Below are positions 6,682 through 27,425 of a stretch of DNA of 32,000 bases, piece after piece. Below the pieces are notes generated by a model. That model was given only the letters and a program-made list of their open reading frames with translations. It was not told the origin of the DNA and ran no database searches. A program made the position numbers and the translations under genes. Numbering within the stretch: the stretch's first letter is position 1; every line of letters begins with the position of its first letter. The stretch is from Wallemia ichthyophaga EXF-994. Its lineage: Eukaryota; Fungi; Basidiomycota. Location: positions 1-32,000 of the forward strand of contig NW_008806299.1 in NCBI RefSeq assembly GCF_000400465.1, written 5' to 3'.

Positions 6682-7402
6682 ATGTTCCCAAACTCGATAA
6701 ATTCCCTAAGCCATCTCCCTATACAAACAATGCAGCCGATAAAAGACGAAGTGAATGTCTTTGAGGAGTCTTGGAAGGAGCATAACATGAACAATTTCAA
6801 CCAGCTTTATCCCCACCAAGTTGATCTGCAAGGTGAGTTTGTTAGTGGGACTGATTCACACTGATCTAATTAGTGTGGCAACAGCAACGCCTCACACGTT
6901 GAATATCTCGAATATCTCGCAAATTAAGCCTGAAACAATTATACCACAAACGCAGCCTAACGCTACACAGCCCCTCACACGCCTACAAGCCGCCACACAA
7001 TCGCAGCCCTCGTCATACACTGATAGCGCGAGCAGCGAACGCAGCAGCCCGACCAAGAAGTCTCGCAGAACATCGCACAACTTGGATAACAACGACATTC
7101 CGCCACTGATGAAGCCTGTTGGCCGACGCGGAGATATAAGCCTTCAGTTCGGCGAGGATGGTCGCGAATTGAGCAAGGAGGAGCGCAGGAAAATTACAAT
7201 GGATAGGAACAAGAGTGCTGCAGCTCGCTGTCGTCAGCGCAAGCGCCAGTGGACTCTCAATCTCCAAGAAGAGGTAGATATGCTTTACACGGAGCAGCAG
7301 GCATTGAAAGACGAGAGGCAGCTGCTGAAAAATGAAATAGATGATCTGAGAAAGACAGTAGCTGAGCTGACTAGCTACGCGCTTGAACGAGGACATAGCT
7401 AG
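6682..7402 (+). CDS. ATF/CREB (Atf1/AtfA-like) bZIP transcription factor A, about 222 aa, 2 exons
   Basis: Intron 6833-6884 (GTGAGT...CAG) gives a 669-nt frame. Basic region DRNKSAAARCRQRKRQW is followed by a leucine zipper. N-terminal KDEVNVFEESW resembles the Atf1 OSA motif EPNPFEQSF. Confidence 0.88.
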
Positions 7403-7503
7403 AGAGAAAATTGTTAAAGAAAAACACCGACATTTTCCATTAATAGTACCTCCCAACGAGCATCATCTTGAAATTATAAGCTTTTGTCATTGAAATACAA
7501 TGC

Positions 7504-7522
7504 TTTTTTTTTTTTTTTTTTT
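7504..7522. repeat. Poly(T)19 tract between the two bZIP genes
   Basis: Read directly. Likely a nucleosome-excluding or 3'-end element. Confidence 0.95.
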
Positions 7523-7614
7523 GCATATGATTCATGATATAATATCATTTCACGAATGAATGACACACGTTTGTGTATTCTTTTCAGCAGGCCGTCATCT
7601 GTCTCGGTCTCTGG

Positions 7615-8342
7615 ATGGAAGAGGTTGTCAGTACGGGAGAGCCTAATCCTGACAGCGATATCTGCCGCAATGGTGATATCTACTTTGGCGCCTATAATGA
7701 ATACAACGATAAGAATCCAAAATCTTGGTACGGCACGTTGGCCGGGTTTGAGGGTGGAGAGATTAACGCTGACAATTTCAGAGCACCTGATGAATTCGGT
7801 TTTCCCGCTTTGAACTTTAACTTTCTGAATGTTGATGACAAATCACATCCGAGCGCTGAGACTTCCAACACGGCTACAGCCTCCTCAGAAACGAATGAAG
7901 CTTTATCAAACACTGTAGTCATCCCAAAAACATTCGATCTCGCTGTCCCACCTACCACCGCCAGCAAACCATGGCAAAAGATTCCCGATGCACCACCACT
8001 GATGAAGCCGGTAGTGGGTGGAATGATTGTACTTTGCCGCCGCTGACGCATTTCAAGGGCAGGGTCGGCGATAAGTCTTTGCGCGTCAACGCCGACGGCG
8101 TTAAACTGAGCACGGAGGAACGCAAATCTCTTGCTCTCGAACGCAACCGTAGCGCGGCTCTGCGCAGCCGAACGCGAAAAAAATTATGGCTCACCGAGCT
8201 AGAAACCAAGGTCGAGACACTCACAGCCGAACAAGATAAACTTAAGTCAGAGCGCAGTGCTCTTCAGGAAAAAATTGTCAAGCTTAAAGAAGAGATGATT
8301 GAACTCAAAGAGGAGCTACTACGAAGCCGAGGACAGTTCTAG
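7615..8342 (+). CDS. bZIP transcription factor B, paralog of A, about 227 aa, 2 exons (start codon uncertain)
   Basis: Intron 8014-8057 (GTGGGT...CTGAC...AAG) joins PPLMKPV to GRVGDKSL. Basic region ERNRSAALRSRTRKKLW is followed by a long zipper. First in-frame ATG is at 7615. Confidence 0.85.
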
Positions 8343-17347: not shown

Positions 17348-20300
17348 TCACTGGAGGTCTCGTAAAAAACCACCCTTCTCGAAACTCTCAGTTGAGTTTT
17401 CGCTGTATATGCCGTTGACATATTTATCCTTGTCAATCAAACCTGCAATCAATCTGTTGTTCAACAAGTCAAAGTTGATTGGCTTGGTGAAGAAGGCTGA
17501 TGAGTAAATTAGTTAAGGCAACATCCATCAGCTATCAACTCACCATCAAATCCACACTCTATCAATGCGTCGTGATCATTTGGTGATATAGATGCAGATA
17601 CTGCAAAAATTGGTATTCTTTTGTTAATGCGATGCCAATTACGGCCTTTAACTTTTCCGGCTTTCTCCGCTTGTCTTATGCTTTCGCATGAATTGTAACC
17701 GTCCTTTATGGGCATCATGAGATCCATCAAGACCACATCAAAGCCTTTTTCGTCGTTTATTACAGCTTCTGCACCTGCTTCACCATTGTTTGCCAGCTCA
17801 ACTGTGCAGCTGTCACCCTTGGATAGCTTCTTCTTCAGTATATTGCGATTGATTGGATCATCGTCAATATAGATCACTCTGGCTGGAATTTCTGGTATAA
17901 CATTGTCATCCTCATGCACTTCTTCGTGCTCCTTATCTTCCATTATCACATCACTCTTGCTATTAACAGTTTCGGTATCTGCCACCCTCAAGCCCTCGAT
18001 ACCCTCACTGACTGAATGTATATCGTTTTGCGGTATGGAAGTTGAACGTCCAGGAGCAGCCTTGATTGGAAAAGCGCTATCTTGAACTTGAAATCTACCT
18101 TTTCTTGAACGCCTCTTAGCTTTTGTGCTACTGCTTCCGCTGTCACCACTGCTACTGGCACTCTTGCTTCCGCCAATACTTTGGTCAGAATCACCAGGGC
18201 GTGCCCTTTGTGGAATTTTTTGTGCAGTGGATGATTCAGAATTCTTTGTCAGACCGGATCCTGAAGACGATGGTGCTAAGGCTTCAACAAACGAGTCAAG
18301 CTCACTTCTTTGTTGTAAGTCTTTTCCAATCGTTTGAACTTCATCACTTGTGACAGTATCCCCTTCTGTTTGAGGAGCTTTGTTTCGGTATTTGATTCGC
18401 ACTGAACGCTCAGAGAGATCAGAGCTACCAGGGTTTGAAGCACTCTAGAAATGATGTTAGATAAGAATATCACCTAGATCCATCTACCCACCTCTAAAGT
18501 CGCCTTATCTGGTAGATTAAAAGGAAGAATTGCTGTGAATACGCTACCTTTTCCAGGCTCGGATGAACACTTCAACTGTCCGTCAAGTTGCTCTATGGCT
18601 CTAGCACACGATGCCAAACCGAGTCCCAAATTAATATCGGATCCATCACTGCCTCCGCTTTCTGTTAATTGAAAATCAACCTTTTCGAATCCTGTAAACA
18701 AAGCTTCAAGCTTTTGCTTTTTTATGCCGACACCTTCGTCTTGAACAGTGAGTGCAATGTTTGCTCTATTAGACTCCTTATCTAGTTCATTGAGGCCGAC
18801 GAAAATATTACCGCCATCTTTATTGTATTTTACTGCATTGCTTATGAGAGATGTCAATATGGTACGAAGCTGTAGCATGTTAGCATTGCTTGTTCTAACA
18901 AGTTATCACCCGCCTTTCTATGATCGCTAATGACATGAGAGTGAATATGCTTGACATTCACTTTGAGATTGAGACTACGTCTCTCCACTTCTTGTTTAAA
19001 TTCCTGCACAGTTTCAGAAACAAGATGTTTCAAGTGAACTGGCTCATTGAAAAGCACCTCCTGACCAGAATCAACCTTTGTAAGATCAAGTAGATCATTG
19101 ATTGTGAATAACAAACTCTTTGATGCATCTCTGCTGCGTGTCAAGTTTTCTCTCGTTTCGTTGTCAAGATTGCCTTCCAATGCCAATTCAACGTAATTTA
19201 TTATGTGATTGAGAGGAGTTCTGACTTCATGTGAGGCATTCGATAGCAAAATACGAGACAGGTGACTGGTTTTGCTGAGTTCAGTCTTTTGCCTCCATAT
19301 CTCGATAAATTTACCATAAACAACCGCAAGTACACCTGCAGTCTCGAGCTGCTCGTCTTCCCATTGCTTCGCGGACATCATAACCTCTTCTGTCCACTTT
19401 TTAAAGCTTGCTCTTGGTTGTAAAGAAATATTCTTGTTCTTATTAGGATTTCCTGCCCATGACACTGACGACATTTCACCTCTTCTCAAGAAGCAGATAA
19501 AGTCTTCAGTAGTTTTAGAAAGGGGTATGTAAAGTAATCCAGCTATAGATCCGATTGAGCTGCTTGCCTCTAGTTCAGGAAAGTTTTTGTTTATGTTGTT
19601 TGTATAAATCATTTGCTCAAATCTTTGCATTCGCAAAAACTCTCCAATTGCTATAACTTCTCTACTACGATTCATATCGCCTAGAATTTTCATTGTGTCT
19701 CCAATAGACAAAAGCCCATAATCCGCATCAAAGACACTAAGTAAATCAAGTGCTGTAGATGCTATGTAACCACCAGGGTGAGTTTCTGATGGAACTGTGG
19801 ATATCAACTTTCTTGATTGAAGTCGGCGTGTGTATGCCAGCCTCTCTACGTTACGTGAAATAGAGTCTGAAAGTAGCTTGAGAACTTGCAACATTGGGAA
19901 TGTTACACGCATTCCATTATCACCGCTACTATGACACGCTACCAGACCGTAAAGCTGACCAAATACTACTATACTGATTGAGAGTGAGGCTCTGACATTC
20001 ATGTTTCCGAGATATTTGATGTGTATTGGCGACATTGCTCGAAGAGAACAATTGGACATATCTAAAGGATATGCTAAATCTATACCATCGCGAACGACCA
20101 TTCTTGCAGTAAGCTTATCTCTATCGTATAACTGACGAACTTTGTTTCTCTTGTAGAGATCGCGCGCTTGTGCGGGGATGTCAGATGAAGGAAAGTTTAA
20201 GCCATGATAGAGATCCTTCATCCTTTGCCAGTCAACTAGTTCGGCGACAACCTTGCCGTTGTACTCAGGGTCAAATTGATACAACATTATTCTGTGAAAC

Positions 20301-22369
20301 TGAGTCAAATCCTTGACCATACCAACAGTGACATCGAAAAGCTGTTGGACATCATTAACGGAGCTAAGCTGCTCATTTATCTCTCCCAACAAGCCAACAA
20401 TATCTAATGATGACAGACTACCTGGCATATTCATGCTTCTTTGAACTTTCGATCTAGCTTGTGCACGTCTATGTGACTTTCGACGCTTCTCGGCTGCTTC
20501 TTCATCCTCATTTGCTTGATTAGCGTTTTCAAGTAAGGTTGCGACCCTTTGACGTGTTTCGTGAGTACGTTCGGCCTTTCTTATTCTCGCAAGAGTTTTA
20601 AGCGGCCTGTGATATGGAGTTGTGCTACGACGAATATCTTCAATAGAAACATCGTCGTTACCGTGAGATGCATCAACTGCTTCATTTGTCATGCGCGTTT
20701 GCTGACGATGTCTTTTTTCATCTTTAAATTTATTGCCTTCACCTGGCACTGCATGTACGGTTTCACTAGATTGCGTGGTCCCAGTATTGCCACCTTTCCC
20801 AGAATTAGAGGTCAAAGCCGCAGTCGTAGAGCCCGTATCATGGGTAACACCGGATGATGGATTTTTTCCGCTTGAGCTAAGATTGAGATCTAAAGACTCG
20901 GCTGGTTTTGCGTCTCTGGCATCAAATTCTTTCGGTAATTTGGAAACTTCATCTACATATGCAGGGTATTTGAGCGATACGATCGGTTCAAACTCTAATA
21001 TGTAAAATCCTTGTCTGCCAAACACCTCTTCAGGAGGTGGATAGTGTTTATTGAGAGGTGGTGGTAGTTCTGGTTTGTGAACAGCACTATCAAATTCGTA
21101 AGATTGTAATAAGAGCTTGGGTACCATACTCACCACCAACAAGTCCAGACCTTGTTATGATTACTTTCGTCAGAGAAAGCACTGTCGCTGTACTGATCTT
21201 GTAAGTTAATATCCCCACGGCCACTGACAGCAAACACTTGAGCTTTGTCTTTTTCAAAAACCCCAGAACTATCGGATCCGGAATCATCCACAACAGCCAA
21301 ATCGAAGAGAATGTCTCTCATTTTTAATCTGCTGTCATTGTCGAGGATGTTGGTAAAACAATTTAGGGAGAAGAGGAATTCTGGCGAACAGCCAATAATG
21401 TCAGGACAATTTTCTGATGCTTGACGGACGATGGAGTTGCCATTGTCGTCATTTTGTAGCACAATCATAGCTCCGAATGGCTGAATTGCACCAGGCCTAC
21501 TGATTGGTTCGTCCTCACACTTTTTCATCTTTGAGTTGTGGTGTGTGATCAAGTAGAATTCACCGTTCTCTTCGTAATATTGGAATCGCCTCGTAGTTGG
21601 TAGAGGTGATTCTTCATCCGCCAATGAATTAATGGATGATTCACCTTCACTTTGATCAATTGGAATTTCATTTATAGGAATTGATGGTTTATTGAGATTA
21701 TTTGCTTTAGATAGCTTATCTTTGTGTATGTCCATTGCTTCCGCTGCAGTAGAAGGTTGTTTCTGAAACATATGTAAATATTAAGCAGCTTGACTATTTA
21801 TAACTCACCCTAGTACCATCCTCATCGCTTCTGCTGCCAGAAGAGTTCGAATCTCCCATATCTTCCATTTTAGTGGCAATGTGGTCACGCTCACGCATTT
21901 CCTCTTCTTCCTTAGTGGGACCTGCGCTATCATCAGCACCATTAGAAAGACTTGTGCTTGATAATTGAGCCTGCATTTCCTCATCTTCTGGCAAAGGCTG
22001 ATTCGGATCATTGAGATGAACATTTCTGTCAATACCCCTTGGGACCGACCTCGGCTGGCTAACTGAGGAGCTGACTTTCTCATTTTCAGCTTTGCGTCTA
22101 TCGAAATTTGCGTGATTTGCAGTTGGTGAAGTTGGCTGCTGGGTTGGAGCGCAGTCGTTTTTGCTCTCCTCTTGGATGAAATCCTTGCTCGTATTGTTAC
22201 TGTCGCTGGCAATGCTCGATTGAAGATCCCAGTCCTGCTCACCTCGCGCTGAGCTAGCTTCGGCGTCAGCGTGAGATGCACTGGGCGCAGAGCTTAGAGA
22301 CAACGTCGAAGTAGTTCTATTAAAGACGCTGCGTACGGGAAATACGAATTCCCCTTCGCTATCGCCCAT
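17348..22369 (-). CDS. fphA: Fungal phytochrome 1 (NTE-PAS-GAF-PHY-HisKA-HATPase-REC), about 1596 aa, 6 exons
   Basis: Motifs: KCEDEPISRPGAIQPFG (bilin Cys, codon 21517-21519), FPSSDIPAQARDLY, LRAMSPIHIKYL, ACH, WAGNP, PRASFKKW, SHEVRTPL, SNAVKY, DEGVGI, GLGLA, DDDPIN/MDLMMP/KP receiver. Introns at 21763-21808, 21087-21133, 18870-18913 (GC-AG), 18445-18491 and 17497-17543 give a 4791-nt frame. Confidence 0.95.
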
Positions 22370-22838
22370 GCTGAATTTCGACTTTATTTATTTCCCGACT
22401 TTTTAGGTGATGGTGGCGACGTAAATCTTGGACGAAGATCGTTGGAGTGATCGTCGGCGATACGTAAGAAGTAAATTTTGTGATCAATGCGTGTATAGTT
22501 TACAATATAGATAGAAATACAGCGAATTGTAATCACGTGTTCTTTCATCCGACCGTACTGCGTATGTGTGCTGTCAAGCCAAAGTCGAAAAGACCCTCAC
22601 GAGGCTTTTCATAGGTGAGAGGATGTTAAGACTTCCTCAGTGACGTCTAGCTTGTGGCATTTGGCGTATAATGTTTTTTCTTGGGTGCTCAAGTTCCTGA
22701 GCTCCTATGCCTGGTAGAATTACCTTCAATCTACATAAGCAATACTATGCACATTTATTACACCCAGAGTATACAAAAAGAAATACTACAATAAAACCCG
22801 CAAACAAAATATAATTAGTTATTGAAATTTCTTGGAAA

Positions 22839-25800
22839 CTAACCAATGAGACCACCACGTTCGAATCTCTTTCCTTCTTTATACTGGAATTTAGATACGT
22901 CTTCCTCTTTACTAAGCGCGTTGACAATCTCGATAAGCGTTGCAAAATGCAGTGGCTTGAGGAAAAATCCATTGAAACCCTGTTCTTTCAAAGTCGGCAG
23001 GTCATTTTGAGTGATTGAGGCAGAGAAGGCAAAAACCGGTAATGGCCCATTCTGGCTCTTAGTCCTGAAAGACCTGCCTTCCTTCTCCATGCTGCGAATT
23101 TTGCCCACACATTCTTTGCCGTCACAAACTGGCATCATTAAGTCCAACAGCATCACGTCAAATCCGGTATTCTCTCCACTCAGCTGGTCGAGCGCTTCTT
23201 GGCCGTTATCAGTAAGTACGACGTTCATTTCTTTTAGTCTTCTTGCTATTATTCTATTATTGATAGGATCATCGTCGCAAGCCAGTAGACGAGTTTGGGT
23301 GGGGCCCTCCTTAATAGTGAGGTTGTCCTTTATTTCCTTCGCTAAGTCTTGAGGCTCACCATGCTCGCTCGGTTCTGGTGCATAATCTATCACTTTGGCT
23401 CCTTCCGCTTTCGACTCACTCATGGCACTCTCTGAGTCATTGGTCTGATTTATCTGAGACATCGACGGCTTATGCCTGGCTTTTAAACTCTTACGTTGTG
23501 CAGACGGTTTGCTTGATGCGTCGCTCAAAGACTGTGTGTTAGAGTTGGTGAGATCCTCAATATCGCTCTGGCTCGCCAAGCTGAGCGGGATAGTGACGTG
23601 CCATTTCGTATATTCACCTAAAAGCTGTTAAACGAATTGTTTGGAGATACCAACACTTACCTCTCCGAGATGAACAAGTCATCTTCGCTTGTAACAGAGA
23701 AACAGCTTTGGCGACCTGCACCAAGCCCCTTCCAAAAGAGTTGCCCTCGGAGCTGTCATGTGTCGATACTGACTCAGTTTGCTCACTACCTGTCCCACTA
23801 GTATTCTCAAGCTTTTCAAATCCATGAAACATCTCCTTTAAGCGTCTTTGCGAAATACCGGTACCAGTGTCATGAACTGTAAGCATTATAGCTGAGGTGT
23901 TGTTTTGATCAGTCTCATGCTCAGATATGGACGTCAACTTGATATACACTTTGCCTTTTTCGTGATTATATTTGATGGCATTTTCGAGAAGATTTTTGAC
24001 TATTAGACGGATCTGAGGGGAGTGAGTTAGTGTTAATGAAAAACAACAAAACACAAACCTTTCTATTATCAGAAACTATGAATGGATTTTCTATTTGACT
24101 TGTTTCTATTTCGATCGATATATTCCGGCTGATCATTTCCTGTTTGAACATCTCAACACAATCGAGGACATTGCTAACGATATTCATAGCGCTCTTGACT
24201 GGCGCATTCTCTTCCGATTGAGTGGTGAGCGATATGAGATCATTGACTGCATAGAGCATGCTCTGAGCACTAGATTTAGTCTTTTTGAGATTCTTGCGCG
24301 TTTCTTTATCAAACACACCCTCCTTCTTCTCCAACGCCATATCCAAATAGCTGCAAAAATGATGCAGAGGTGTACGCAGCTCATGCTCAAAGTCTTTGTC
24401 TACATTGGTCATTAACAGATCAGACAGCTTAGATCTTGTACTCTGACGATTACGTCCAAGCACCTTTGAGTAGACGGCTGAGAGGACAGATGCACTTTCA
24501 AGCTCTTCCGGCCGCCATTCTCTTGCAGTACTGGTGACAGATTCTGTCCACTTTTTGAAGCTAGCTCTGGGTTGAAGGGGTGTACTACCCACAGTCTTTT
24601 CACTCGGATTACCAGCCCATGAAATATTTTCCAATTGACCACTGCGTATGAACGCAATGAAGTGATCACCAGGCGCTTCCTTAGAATTGTCATTGAGTGG
24701 GACATATAGCAATCCCGATAAGTTCTGTTCGTTGTTTATCTCTATATTAGGATATTCCCGCTTCAGTCTTGTTGTGTATCGAATATCTTTCCACTTCTTC
24801 TGCTTGAGGTACTTTCCAATTTGCTTAATGTCATCGTAATACTCATCATTACCAATGATTTTCATCTTGCCATTGTAGCAGATAATTAAATTCTCACTAT
24901 CGAAGAGGCGAAGTAGATCAATGTCTTTATTTGACGAGATACTTCCACTCATTGTGTCATTTGGATTCATCAGAATGCTTCGTCCCATGAGACGTTTTCT
25001 ATATATTGCATTATCCATATTTCTAGATATCATATCAGAAAACATCTGTGAAGCTTTGTTAGGTTGTTTGAGTCGGGCAATGAACTAAACTCACCTTCAG
25101 TAGTTGCATTTGAGGGAATGAAACTCTCATCTCCTTCTCGAAAGAGTGACACGATACCAAACCAAAGAGATTGCTACTATTAGGACGCTGCGTGACAACA
25201 CTGATTGACAGGGATGACCTGACATTCATATTTTTTAAATAGCGAATATGTATTGGCGACATAGCTCTAAGAGCACAGCCGCTCATATTTAGTGGATATT
25301 TCAAGTCATTTTTGTTTCTGACAACCACCTGACTAATCTTTGCATCTCGATCAAAAAGTTGCCTAACTTTGCTGTGTTTATAAAGCTCTCTAGCTTGAGC
25401 GGGAATATCAGAGGCAGGGAAATGTAGCCCATGAAAAATTTCATTGCAGCGCTGCCAGTTCATGAGTTCACTCTCAACCTTTCCATTGGCTTCGCTGTCA
25501 AACTTATACAACAGCACTCTGTCAAAATTGGTAATATCCTTTGTAAGACCTACGATGACATCGTAGAGGTCTTCAATCGACTTCTCTGCTGCTTCAGCAA
25601 GTTGGGAATCAATCTCTTGACAAAGACTCAAAACATCTAGTGAGCTAATTCCATCTGGATTGTTGATGTGTCTTCTTATTTTTGCGCTCAAATGTTCGCG
25701 ATCCATCTCCTCTTCTCGTATGGCACGTTTAGAGTCGTCTAGCGTTTCCAATTGCCTTCTCTCCTTTTCAAGCTTCTCCAAGAACAACTTGTTAGTCCTT

Positions 25801-27425
25801 TGTGATCTTTGCAGTATCCTGAGTGGCTTAGATTTACTGATAGTAGACCGGCGAATTTCAAGCAGAGTAGCATAGCTGTCCTGTCCCAAACTCCAATAAG
25901 GCTCGTCGTAGTAGTCTGGATTTTGCTCATCTGCGTTATTTGTTTTGACGTCAGTGACTTCCTGCATGTTATTAGGTTTAACAGTGTCATTTGTGCTGTT
26001 CGTGTTTGACTGAATCGTATGATCAACAGAGCCGTTATTCCTGATAGTGTCTTCAGCAGAATTGCTGCTTTGCTTGAACAAGTTAATGGGATATAACGGG
26101 TGGATATCCTTGTCAAAAATTCTAGGTATCTCAGCGTTACTCATTTTTGCCTTAGCGGCTGGATCATAAATCGGTTCAAATTCGAGAATAATTCGACGAC
26201 CACCTTGATCTTGACTGTTATGATGAACGGGTTCTTCACCTAGTTCATTTTCCATATCGTTAACAGCTGCGGTAGTGGTAGCTTTCTGCGCTGCACACCA
26301 ACACCACCATTCTCGGCTACCCTCGATGCCTTCCTTCCCTACACCTGACAAGGAGAACGTGTGTATCGCTTCTCTATCTCTCTTGTCTCCGTCCAATTCG
26401 ATTAGCTCGATAATAACATCATGCAGCTTAGACGCGCTTTCGGCACTGAGAATATCGGTCAAACAGTTAAGCTTGAAGAGATTGCGCACTGAAGTACCAA
26501 GATGTACATTGACGTTCTCTGACGCTTGCATGACGCGCAACTCATCATCATACAATTCAACCACAAGCAAGCATCCAAAGCTTTGTATGGCACCAGGTGT
26601 TGCAATGGGTTCATCTTCACATGTGTGGATCTGATTATCACCGACTTGGATATAGAATCCGTCTTGGGCTTCCTTGAGTGAGAATGCTGGGAATTTCGGT
26701 AAAGCGGTGTCAGATGATGTATTATTGGTTGTCTCTTCTCTTGATGGTTTACTAAAAATATCTACTGTGCTATACTGATCATCAGCGGAATCTTCCTTAT
26801 CCTTCTGACGATTATATTGTATGTGTGATTCCATAGCTTCAGCGGCGGTACTGGTGCGATATTTAAAAAATTCATTGGACTGACTAGCATCTTGGACTGC
26901 CTCATCCTTTTCTTTGCCTCTTTTGGCATCTTCACCTGACATACTCAAACCGCTACTGACAGCATCGTTTTCGCGCTGGGTTTCCTCATCCAAAGTTGGG
27001 CCATCTTCACCAGAATCAGCGTTGGTGGTGGAGATGGAATCGACTGATCTGTCATCAGCGGAAGATGGTGTCCTTTCGTCTGTACGTAGTTAGTCATCAT
27101 TTTTGCGCCGATAGCACCACAAACCTGGTAAGGGGAGATTTGGATCATCGGTGGCTACATGCTGCTCCAATCTCTGTGGAGCGGTATTGGATTGAGGCTG
27201 CTGGCTCGAATACACCTCATCTCTAGGATTTGTAGGCCGTCTGCTGTAGACGAACTCTCCAGATGAAGAGGGCGAATATGCTGGTCGCTGGGCTTTGTCA
27301 GTGTGTTTATGGGAGCCTTCTGATGCTAAATCCTGGGCTTCGTTGCCTTCTTGGGCTTGTTGATCCTTAGCCACTTCCTGCTGCGACGATCGCCTAGACT
27401 TCTGTGGGAAGCTGAATTCAGTCAT
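22839..27425 (-). CDS. Fungal phytochrome 2, tandem paralog, about 1467 aa, 5 exons
   Basis: Motifs: TCEDEPIATPGAIQSFG (Cys codon 26619-26621), FPASDIPAQARELY, LRAMSPIHIRYL, SCH, WAGNP, PRASFKKW, EHELRTPL, ENAIKY, DTGTGI, DDDPIN/LDLMMP/KP receiver. Introns at 27080-27124, 25046-25094, 24013-24058 and 23618-23660 give a 4404-nt frame. Confidence 0.95.

What the first reader, a model, noticed from the sequence alone, without database searches (positions are those of the whole stretch)
17348..27425. Head-to-tail pair of full-length fungal phytochromes, both photochemically intact on sequence
Two complete PAS-GAF-PHY-HK-REC genes sit in tandem on the - strand, 469 bp apart. Both keep the N-terminal bilin Cys (CEDEP), the DIP motif, the His of SPIH, the CH histidine, and the WAG and PRxSF tongue motifs. 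Fungal phytochromes (FphA, PHY-1/2) work as dimers and signal through the HOG pathway (established). An adjacent, diverged but intact pair suggests subfunctionalisation, for example light versus temperature/osmotic sensing, or a heterodimeric receptor (inference).
Basis: partly seen in the sequence, partly recalled or inferred. Interest (0 to 1): 0.8.

Follow-up and report, generated by a model that had tools for sequence, protein, structure and literature searches.

The report
Tandem phytochrome gene pair in Wallemia
The halophilic fungus Wallemia ichthyophaga carries two adjacent, anciently duplicated red-light-sensor (phytochrome) genes that both look functional; this is a real, conserved, little-studied member of a well-known receptor family, not a new kind of system.

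Summary
Window 17348-27425 (minus strand) holds two complete, intron-containing phytochrome hybrid histidine kinase genes, 469 bp apart. I call the upstream gene A (1467 aa) and the downstream gene B (1596 aa).

The window matches W. ichthyophaga (EXF-994 type). The same A-then-B pair, between a HIT gene and a 4HBT_2 gene, occurs in two divergent W. ichthyophaga lineages, W. hederae and W. mellicola. It is absent at the phytochrome loci of Ganoderma, Tulasnella and Cryptococcus.

A and B share 33% identity. They group together in the tree (bootstrap 97/100), so the duplication is specific to the Wallemia lineage and predates the split of the three sequenced species. Both are under purifying selection (dN/dS: A 0.20-0.31, B 0.14-0.15).

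Divergence is asymmetric. B is canonical. A keeps the bilin pocket but has a rewritten PHY-to-kinase linker, a sub-threshold HisKA match and non-canonical G2/G3 ATP-lid boxes.

Subfunctionalisation or heterodimerisation remains untested. A. fumigatus FphA/FphB is a published heterodimer precedent.

Novelty is modest: the genes are already annotated, and duplicated fungal phytochromes are known. Interest 0.35.

The parts
22839..27425 (-). Phytochrome A, the upstream fast-evolving paralogue. 1467 aa, 5 exons: 27425-27125, 27079-25095, 25045-24059, 24012-23661, 23617-22839 (stop included).
   Evidence: Gene model, identical to public protein P0044. Pfam domains. Intron positions match W. hederae P0015.
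17348..22369 (-). Phytochrome B, the downstream canonical paralogue. 1596 aa, 6 exons: 22369-21809, 21762-21134, 21086-18914, 18869-18492, 18444-17544, 17496-17348 (stop included).
   Evidence: Gene model. Pfam finds all six domains above cutoff. Intron positions match W. hederae P0003. A 1596-aa product is annotated in GCA_004917845.1. B aligns over GAF-PHY-DHp-CA with the full-length bacteriophytochrome 8u4x (E = 1.9e-56).
22370..22838 (-). 469-bp intergenic spacer, holding the 3' end of A and the presumed promoter of B.
   Evidence: A spacer of about 470-480 bp is present in all Wallemia loci. Its sequence is poorly conserved between species, which suggests B has its own promoter; this is inference.
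26607..26621 (-). CEDEP of A, with the bilin-binding Cys254.
   Evidence: It aligns with the conserved Cys of bacterial and fungal phytochromes.
21505..21519 (-). CEDEP of B, with the bilin-binding Cys269.
25143..25412 (-). GAF chromophore-pocket motifs of A: SDIPAQAR 657-664, SPIH 708-711, SCHS 743-746.
19928..20185 (-). GAF chromophore-pocket motifs of B: SDIPAQAR 698-705, SPIH 749-752, ACHS 780-783.
24557..24622 (-). PHY tongue of A: SWAGNP 904-909 and PRASF 921-925.
19403..19462 (-). PHY tongue of B: SWAGNP 939-944 and PRASF 954-958.
23661..24388 (-). Kinase core of A. It contains the H-box EHELRTPL (His983), the N box NAIKYN, G1 DTGTGI, a non-canonical G2 (FGRGL), 'QAKM' in place of 'GGQL', and, across intron 4, 'GEYTKW' in place of the G3 box 'GKGSxF'.
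   Evidence: The HisKA match scores 23.7 bits against a 26.9 cutoff.
18492..19234 (-). Kinase core of B: canonical H-box SHEVRTPL (His1016), N box NAVKYN, G1 DEGVGI, G2 LGLGLA and G3 GKGSVF.
18870..18913 (-). GC-AG intron (intron 3 of B, donor GCGGGT).
   Evidence: Only this splice keeps the reading frame and the N-box helix LRTILTSLISNAVKYN. The GC donor is conserved in three W. ichthyophaga lineages. W. hederae has GTGAGT at the same position.
22953..23279 (-). Receiver domain of A: DDD 1323-1325, phospho-acceptor Asp in LDLMMP 1366-1371, Lys in FFLKP 1426-1430.
17480..17868 (-). Receiver domain of B: DDD 1441-1443, phospho-acceptor Asp in MDLMMP 1487-1492, Lys in FFTKP 1549-1553. It spans intron 5.

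Best explanation
**What it is.** These are the two group VIII (phytochrome) hybrid histidine kinases of Wallemia ichthyophaga. They arose by one tandem duplication in the Wallemia stem lineage, before W. mellicola, W. hederae and W. ichthyophaga diverged. Both have since been kept by purifying selection as distinct receptors.

**Shown here.**
- Both encode a complete biliverdin-type photosensory module. It has the PAS Cys, the DIP, SPIH and CH pocket motifs, and the WAG and PRxSF tongue motifs.
- Both also encode a histidine kinase and a receiver domain.
- B stays close to the basidiomycete consensus.
- A took most of the change after duplication, mainly in the output half: the signalling-helix sequence, the DHp domain and the ATP lid (G2/G3 boxes).
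- A nevertheless keeps the 29-residue spacing from the end of PHY to the phospho-acceptor His, so the helical register of the output coupling is preserved.

**Inferred from A. nidulans and A. fumigatus FphA.**
- Each protein binds biliverdin and photoconverts between Pr and Pfr as a dimer.
- Light, and possibly temperature, changes the kinase/phosphotransfer balance towards the Ypd1 phosphotransfer protein. That feeds Ssk1-Ssk2-Pbs2-Hog1, all of which W. ichthyophaga has.
- B most likely is the main FphA-like sensor.
- A most likely is a second photoreceptor with altered output strength or partner specificity. It could act in parallel with B or through A-B heterodimers.
For: - **Gene structure and domains:**
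- **Motifs:** they align to solved phytochromes and to 59 fungal phytochromes.
- **Fold of A:** the AF2 model of the A photosensory module matches only PAS-GAF-PHY structures among the top 50 PDB hits (probability 1.0, target-normalised TM 0.41-0.68). Model confidence is moderate (pLDDT 60).
- **Organism and synteny:**. Single, untandemed phytochromes were found in Ganoderma, Tulasnella and Cryptococcus.
- **Lineage-specific duplication:**
  - The best non-A hit of A among 1.84 billion representative proteins is Wallemia B (571 bits, against 489 for the next fungus).
  - In the NJ tree, A+B are monophyletic in 97/100 bootstraps. Split by region, support is 59/60 for the photosensory columns and 42/60 for the output columns.
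  - Wallemia-only motifs in the N-terminal extension are shared by A and B.
- **Selection:**
  - dN/dS is 0.20-0.31 for A and 0.14-0.15 for B among three W. ichthyophaga lineages, and the ORFs are intact in all three.
  - Between species, pN is 0.13 against pS of about 0.8 for both genes.
- **Asymmetry:**
  - A departs at 21 of 166 near-invariant fungal columns, and B at 6.
  - Mean distance to other basidiomycetes in the output module is 1.51 for A and 0.90 for B.
  - The G2/G3 and linker changes are shown.
  - The 29-residue spacing is conserved.
- **Pathway context:** W. ichthyophaga has four hybrid HKs (groups I/II, III and VIII) and no Sln1. It has Ypd1, Ssk1, Ssk2 and Skn7 (PMC4904012; PMC8620582).
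- **FphA mechanism and FphA-FphB heterodimers:** PMC12607886.
Against: - No expression, chromophore-binding or phosphotransfer data exist for either protein. I found no transcript-derived contigs.
- Both paralogues share substitutions at two positions invariant in the 8 bacterial phytochromes sampled: Trp to Phe/Tyr just before the CH motif, and Arg to Met/Leu. Their photochemical effect is unknown.
- The ATP-lid changes in A could mean weak or no autokinase activity.
- The phylogeny is NJ only, because no ML program was available. Support for A+B in the output-module partition is moderate (70%).
- I did not check whether Wallemia has a heme oxygenase to make biliverdin.
Confidence: 0.75

Rival explanations
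1. Obligate or predominant A-B heterodimer. The two paralogues form one receptor in which A, with its altered ATP lid, modulates the phosphotransfer of B. This would resemble A. fumigatus FphA-FphB, except that both subunits would sense light.
For: FphA-FphB heterodimers have been published (PMC12607886). Tight linkage and a constant spacing of about 470 bp are conserved across the genus. The 29-residue linker register is the same in A and B. A has non-canonical G2/G3 boxes, as expected if one protomer became the non-catalytic partner.
Against: No interaction data exist. The DHp and linker of A have diverged most. After histidine kinase duplications, such divergence usually insulates the paralogues from cross-dimerisation; this rests on established knowledge of HK paralogue specificity and was not tested here. 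Tandem linkage is simply what a local duplication leaves behind.
Confidence: 0.2
2. A is a photoinactive, phytochrome-like hybrid kinase or pseudo-kinase, like A. fumigatus FphB or the fast-evolving PHY-2 lineages. Only B would sense light.
For: A is the faster-evolving copy. Its HisKA match is below the Pfam cutoff. Conserved glycines of the ATP lid are replaced. Fast-evolving fungal paralogues often lose photochemistry (PMC4810495; PMC12607886).
Against: Unlike FphB, A keeps the chromophore Cys, the DIP, SPIH and CH motifs, and the WAG, PRxSF and WxE tongue motifs in all three Wallemia species. The GAF domain is the most constrained part of A (dN/dS 0.08-0.14; 57% identity to B).
Confidence: 0.12
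3. Independent subfunctionalised sensors. A and B form separate homodimers that report different inputs or act in different compartments or stages (for example red light versus temperature or water activity), and both feed Ypd1.
For: Both copies have been retained over a long period under selection. The linker and DHp have diverged, which fits insulation. The N-terminal extensions and inserts differ (18-25% identity). FphA is reported to sense temperature as well as light (PMC12607886).
Against: There is no functional or expression evidence. This overlaps with the best explanation, and sequence alone cannot separate it from the heterodimer model.
Confidence: 0.35
4. Assembly or haplotype artefact, or one copy is a decaying pseudogene.
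For: None found.
Against: A and B share 33% identity. The pair is present in at least seven assemblies of three species. ORFs are intact and dN/dS is 0.14-0.31.
Confidence: 0.01

Closest known systems
Aspergillus nidulans FphA, and basidiomycete Phy1 of Ustilago and Cryptococcus (fungal phytochromes, group VIII hybrid histidine kinases)
   Same: They share the architecture: N-terminal extension, PAS-GAF-PHY, HisKA-HATPase_c and REC. They share the N-terminal biliverdin Cys in the CEDEP context, the pocket motifs and the tongue motifs. B is 38-46% identical to basidiomycete homologues, and both genes sit inside the fungal clade. The downstream pathway components (Ypd1, Ssk1, Hog1) exist in W. 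ichthyophaga.
   Different: Wallemia has two copies in tandem. Both carry Wallemia-specific N-terminal motifs (STAAEAM, DPNxPLP) and a longer charged helical insert between PAS and GAF. Photochemistry and signalling are untested.
Aspergillus fumigatus FphA/FphB pair (PMC12607886)
   Same: It is a two-paralogue system with one conserved and one divergent member.
   Different: FphB lacks the chromophore Cys (it has Met) and lacks GAF/PHY motifs, and it is photoinactive. Wallemia A keeps all of them. The Wallemia duplication is independent (basidiomycete) and its genes are adjacent. No tandem arrangement came up for the Aspergillus pair in the parts of the paper I read; I did not check this directly.
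Neurospora crassa PHY-1 and the fast-evolving PHY-2 (PMC4810495)
   Same: Duplication was followed by asymmetric rates, and both copies were retained in some lineages.
   Different: The ascomycete duplications are separate events. That paper reports that the key cysteine sites are not conserved in phy-2 homologues, whereas Wallemia A conserves the PAS Cys.
Bacteriophytochrome histidine kinases (for example PsBphP 8u4x, DrBphP 8avw, SaBphP2 8uph)
   Same: The sequence and predicted fold of PAS-GAF-PHY-DHp-CA match (E = 1e-45 to 2e-56; Foldseek probability 1.0).
   Different: The fungal proteins add an N-terminal extension of about 240-260 aa, an insert of about 175-190 aa between PAS and GAF, and a fused receiver domain.

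Membership tests
Canonical phytochrome photosensory module (PAS-GAF-PHY) | PAS_2, GAF and PHY domains in that order | tested here: met
   Pfam finds them in both proteins. PDB sequence hits reach E = 1e-46 for A and 2e-56 for B. The AF2 model of A matches only phytochrome photosensory modules in the top 50 hits (the model has a moderate pLDDT of 60).
Canonical phytochrome photosensory module (PAS-GAF-PHY) | Biliverdin-type chromophore Cys N-terminal to the PAS core | tested here: met
   Cys254 in A and Cys269 in B lie in CEDEP(I), in the same column as the Cys of bacterial and fungal phytochromes. The column is invariant in alignment A1.
Canonical phytochrome photosensory module (PAS-GAF-PHY) | GAF pocket residues: DIP motif, His of SPIH, His of CH | tested here: met
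   These are invariant columns D421, I422, P423, H474 and H508 of A1. Both proteins carry them, aligned to solved structures.
Canonical phytochrome photosensory module (PAS-GAF-PHY) | PHY tongue motifs W(G/A)G, PRxSF and WxE | tested here: met
   SWAGNP and PRASFKKWTE are present in both. They correspond to invariant columns W668, G670, P684, R685, F688, W691 and E693.
Canonical phytochrome photosensory module (PAS-GAF-PHY) | Covalent bilin attachment and reversible Pr/Pfr photoconversion | not testable with these tools
   This needs recombinant protein plus a heme oxygenase, zinc blots and spectroscopy.
Fungal phytochrome / group VIII hybrid histidine kinase | HisKA with phospho-acceptor His, plus a HATPase_c domain with N, G1, F and G2 boxes | tested here: inconclusive
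   B meets this fully (HisKA 51.8 bits, canonical boxes). A has the His (EHELRTPL), the N box, G1 and the F box. Its HisKA match is below cutoff (23.7 against 26.9), G2 reads FGRGL, and two invariant glycines near G3 are replaced.
Fungal phytochrome / group VIII hybrid histidine kinase | C-terminal receiver domain with the acidic pocket, the phospho-Asp and a conserved Lys | tested here: met
   The Response_reg domain scores 51.6 bits in A and 56.8 bits in B. DDD, (L/M)DLMMP and (L/T)KP are present in both.
Fungal phytochrome / group VIII hybrid histidine kinase | Phylogenetic placement inside the fungal phytochrome clade | tested here: met
   In the NJ tree of 73 sequences rooted on bacteriophytochromes, Wallemia A+B sits among the basidiomycete phytochromes.
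Fungal phytochrome / group VIII hybrid histidine kinase | Signalling through Ypd1 to the HOG MAP kinase pathway | not testable with these tools
   The pathway components are reported for W. ichthyophaga, but no link to these proteins has been tested.
Photoinactive phytochrome-like HHK (A. fumigatus FphB type) | Loss of the chromophore Cys and of the GAF/PHY signalling motifs | tested here: not met
   Both A and B keep the Cys and all the motifs. The FphB definition comes from PMC12607886.

The most novel reading that the evidence does not exclude
In the most halophilic known fungus, which has only four hybrid histidine kinases and no Sln1 osmosensor, a genus-specific pair of light-competent phytochromes works as a heterodimeric or two-channel receptor. 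The rewired A subunit would tune the phosphotransfer of B to Ypd1. Red light or temperature would then be a major input to the HOG osmoadaptation pathway and its two Hog1 paralogues.
Probability: 0.15. Interest if true: 0.6.

Novelty: new member of a known kind. Interest (0 to 1): 0.35.

Why it matters
Fungal phytochromes connect red light and temperature to the HOG stress MAP kinase pathway. W. ichthyophaga is a model for extreme halophily in which HOG is central. According to the literature, its whole hybrid-kinase repertoire is four proteins with no Sln1. Two of those four are evidently this phytochrome pair.

The pair offers a natural experiment with two properties:
- both paralogues keep the chromophore pocket, and
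- only one of them has a rewritten output module.

It could show how output coupling evolves after duplication. It could also show whether light input matters for osmoadaptation in sun-exposed salterns.

The limits are clear. Duplicated phytochromes, fast-evolving paralogues and phytochrome heterodimers are already described in ascomycetes, so this extends known biology and does not overturn it.

Tried and rejected
- **Transcript evidence.** I looked up the exact A protein in public assemblies to find intron-less (RNA-derived) contigs. Only genomic contigs came back, so there is no expression evidence.
- **Literature.** No open-access paper discusses Wallemia phytochromes. The only mention found is 'group VIII' hybrid HKs, in passing.
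- **Regulatory elements in the 469-bp spacer.** Alignment across three species shows little conservation beyond a short CGCCGATCAC-like block upstream of B. I did not pursue it.
- **RNA genes and repeats.** There are no tRNAs, no Rfam matches and no relevant tandem repeats.
- **Apparent 4-aa insertion before the phospho-His of A**. I rejected it as an alignment artefact, because the spacing from the end of PHY to the His is 29 residues in A, in B and in 48 of 51 fungal phytochromes.
- **Between-species dN/dS.** Synonymous sites are saturated (pS about 0.8), so only pN could be used. I used within-species lineages for dN/dS.
- **Mapping the W. mellicola B protein (P0004) onto locus L002.** This failed part-way, probably because protein and locus come from different strains. 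I therefore left it out of the codon analyses.
- **Genome-contig collection.** I did not use it because it holds only bacteria and archaea.
- **ML phylogeny.** No ML program was available, so I used NJ with bootstrap and domain partitions.
- **AF2 model.** It has only moderate confidence (pLDDT 60), so I used it only as supporting evidence for the fold.


Full report
**1. Observation**

ORF listing and frame analysis of the minus strand between 17000 and 27700 show two long, frame-shifted series of ORFs. They are joined by short introns of 43-49 nt with GT-AG ends and CTAAC-like branch sites.

Splicing them gives two uninterrupted coding sequences:
- Gene A, the upstream gene: 27425 to 22839, 5 exons, 1467 aa.
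- Gene B, the downstream gene: 22369 to 17348, 6 exons, 1596 aa.

The A model is identical to a publicly annotated protein (P0044). A 1596-aa product is annotated for B in one assembly. The intron positions of both genes match the annotated W. hederae orthologues.

One intron of B, 18913-18870, has a GC donor. Only this splice keeps the frame and the N-box helix.

Pfam finds PAS_2, GAF, PHY, HisKA, HATPase_c and Response_reg in both proteins. They sit in the homologous columns of solved phytochromes and of other fungal phytochromes.

**2. Organism and conservation**

B is 96% and 91% identical to proteins of two other W. ichthyophaga lineages. It is 77% identical to W. hederae and 67% to W. 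mellicola. The exact A protein is encoded in the reference assembly GCA_000400465.1 and in two further W. ichthyophaga assemblies.

In every Wallemia locus fetched, the order is the same: HIT gene (divergent), then A, about 470-480 bp of spacer, then B, then a 4HBT_2 thioesterase gene (convergent).

The phytochrome loci of Ganoderma, Tulasnella and Cryptococcus hold a single phytochrome with unrelated neighbours.

**3. Origin of the pair**

A and B are 33% identical overall. Identity by region:

| Region | Identity A vs B |
|---|---|
| GAF | 57% |
| PAS, PHY, REC | 36-38% |
| HATPase_c | 30% |
| N-terminal extension and inserts | 18-25% |

An exhaustive HMMER search with A (aa 1-1124) against 1.84 billion representative proteins found no A-type protein outside Wallemia-like sequences. 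After its own cluster and an unnamed 66%-identical A-type fragment (P0045, from unnamed Logan assemblies), the best hit is Wallemia B at 571 bits. The next hits are other fungi at 489 bits or less.

I built an NJ tree of 73 phytochromes on 787 columns, rooted on bacteriophytochromes:
- The A clade has bootstrap 100, the B clade 100, and A+B together 97.
- The stem branch of A is about twice as long as that of B.
- Split by region, A+B is recovered in 59/60 replicates for the photosensory columns and 42/60 for the output columns.

A and B also share N-terminal motifs seen in no other fungus sampled: STAAEAM, DPN(L/Q)PLP, and a longer charged helical segment before GAF. They share 8 derived states at otherwise conserved columns.

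The simplest reading is one tandem duplication in the Wallemia stem lineage, before the three sequenced species split. Long-branch attraction would tend to pull A away from B, so the grouping is conservative.

**4. Are both genes maintained?**

With my exon model, both ORFs are intact in three W. ichthyophaga lineages that differ by 4-6% at the nucleotide level.

Nei-Gojobori dN/dS is 0.20-0.31 for A and 0.14-0.15 for B. Within A, the GAF domain is the most constrained part, at 0.08-0.14.

Between W. ichthyophaga and W. hederae, synonymous sites are saturated (pS about 0.8), while pN is 0.13 for both genes.

Neither gene is a pseudogene, and neither evolves neutrally.

**5. What differs between the copies**

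I looked at the 166 columns that are at least 90% conserved in 59 other fungal phytochromes. A departs in all three Wallemia species at 21 of them, and B at 6.

None of the 21 A-specific departures falls in the Cys, DIP, SPIH, CH, WAG or PRxSF motifs, which A keeps in full. They cluster after the PHY domain:
- The signalling helix reads YSKVLGRNRQ, where other fungi have the near-universal YGKFIE(I/V)WRQ.
- There are several changes in the DHp domain, and the HisKA match falls below the Pfam cutoff.
- G2 reads (S)FG(R/K)GL, where other fungi have GLGLGLA.
- 'QAKM' replaces 'GGQL'.
- 'GEYTKW' replaces the G3 box 'G(K/S)G(S/T)xF'. Two glycines invariant in all 59 fungal and 8 bacterial sequences are lost.

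These A-specific states are themselves conserved among the three species, and dN/dS for the kinase region of A is mostly about 0.12. They are therefore a derived, constrained state and not decay.

The spacing between the end of PHY and the phospho-acceptor His is 29 residues in A, in B and in 48 of 51 fungal phytochromes. The helical register of photosensor-to-kinase coupling is kept.

An AF2 model of the A photosensory module has moderate confidence (mean pLDDT 60, domain cores 70-88).
- All of its top 50 PDB matches are PAS-GAF-PHY modules.
- It predicts a disordered loop (model residues 173-268) followed by a confident helical hairpin (model residues 284-336) in the insert between PAS and GAF.

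**6. Mechanism**

*Shown.* Both proteins have the sequence requirements of biliverdin-binding, photoconverting phytochromes fused to a hybrid kinase.

*Established elsewhere.* A. nidulans and A. fumigatus FphA bind biliverdin, photoconvert, and also respond to temperature. They act on the phosphotransfer protein YpdA to activate the HOG MAP kinase SakA. FphA and the photoinactive FphB form heterodimers (PMC12607886).

W. ichthyophaga has Ypd1, Ssk1, Ssk2 and Skn7 but no Sln1, and only four hybrid kinases, of groups I/II, III and VIII. Two of the four must be this pair.

*Inferred.* B is the FphA-like main sensor. A is a second, light-competent receptor whose output strength or partner specificity has changed.

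Sequence cannot decide whether A acts through A-B heterodimers or through insulated homodimers. The precedent favours the first. The concentration of change in the linker and DHp is what kinase paralogue insulation usually looks like, which favours the second.

**7. Comparison with what is known, and novelty**

- Several phytochromes per genome are known in ascomycetes: N. crassa has PHY-1 and PHY-2, B. cinerea has three, and A. fumigatus has FphA and FphB.
- A fast-evolving paralogue is also a known pattern there. In those cases it tends to lose the chromophore cysteine.
- The Wallemia case is an independent basidiomycete duplication. It is still in tandem after the genus diversified, and the fast copy keeps an intact pocket while its output module is rewritten.
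- The genes are already in public annotation. UniRef calls the W. hederae proteins 'Phytochrome'.
- I found no open-access paper that describes the pair.
- I file this as a new member of a known kind, with moderate interest (0.35).

**8. Limits**

- There are no expression, spectral, interaction or phosphotransfer data.
- The phylogeny is NJ only.
- The sister Wallemiomycetes (Geminibasidium, Basidioascus) were not available under a name in the searched collections.
- I did not check for a heme oxygenase gene.

Noticed in passing
window 18870-18913 (minus strand); L003 and L004, same position: Intron 3 of phytochrome B has a GC-AG splice (donor GCGGGT), conserved in three W. ichthyophaga lineages. 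W. hederae has GT at this position. The public gene models P0001 (1591 aa) and P0002 (1569 aa) mis-splice here and lose part of the N-box helix (LRTILTSLIS...). The 1580-aa reference model may have the same problem.
   Followed up: partly
window 17448-27425 against L003 (GCA_004918065.1) and L004 (GCA_004918895.1): Relatedness among the three W. ichthyophaga lineages is mosaic. From 27425 to 26435, L003 and L004 are 99% alike and the window is 92% to both. From 26434 to 23439, the window is closest to L004 (97-99%). From 22938 to 17448, the window is closest to L003 (96-98%). This implies at least two recombination breakpoints within about 4 kb, one of them inside gene A. It fits the published LD decay of about 1.3 kb in this species (PMC6738226).
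   Followed up: partly
window 26832-26852 and 27126-27146 (A); 21733-21753 and 21989-22009 (B): The long N-terminal extensions of both paralogues share short motifs (STAAEAM and DPN(L/Q)PLP) that are conserved in all three Wallemia species. They are absent from the other fungal phytochromes aligned. Their function is unknown.
   Followed up: no
window 20490-21060 (B insert, aa ~432-622) and 25640-26160 (A insert): The insert of about 175-190 aa between PAS and GAF ends in a conserved IRRST..KPL motif, which looks like a basic kinase-site consensus, followed by a charged helical hairpin. In B this insert has the lowest dN/dS of the whole protein (0.03-0.07). AF2 predicts confident helices for the A counterpart (model residues 284-336).
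   Followed up: no
window 6821-8342 (plus strand): Two consecutive bZIP-like segments each have a PPLMKPV motif followed by a basic-leucine-zipper region. The collinear locus L003 annotates them as one 427-aa protein with two bZIP_1 domains. This is either an internal duplication of a bZIP module or two fused genes.
   Followed up: no
window 22430-22450 (minus strand, about 60-80 nt upstream of the B ATG): A short CGCCGA(CGA)TCAC-like block is the only element of the A-B spacer that is recognisably shared by W. ichthyophaga, W. hederae and W. mellicola. It may be a promoter element of B.
   Followed up: no
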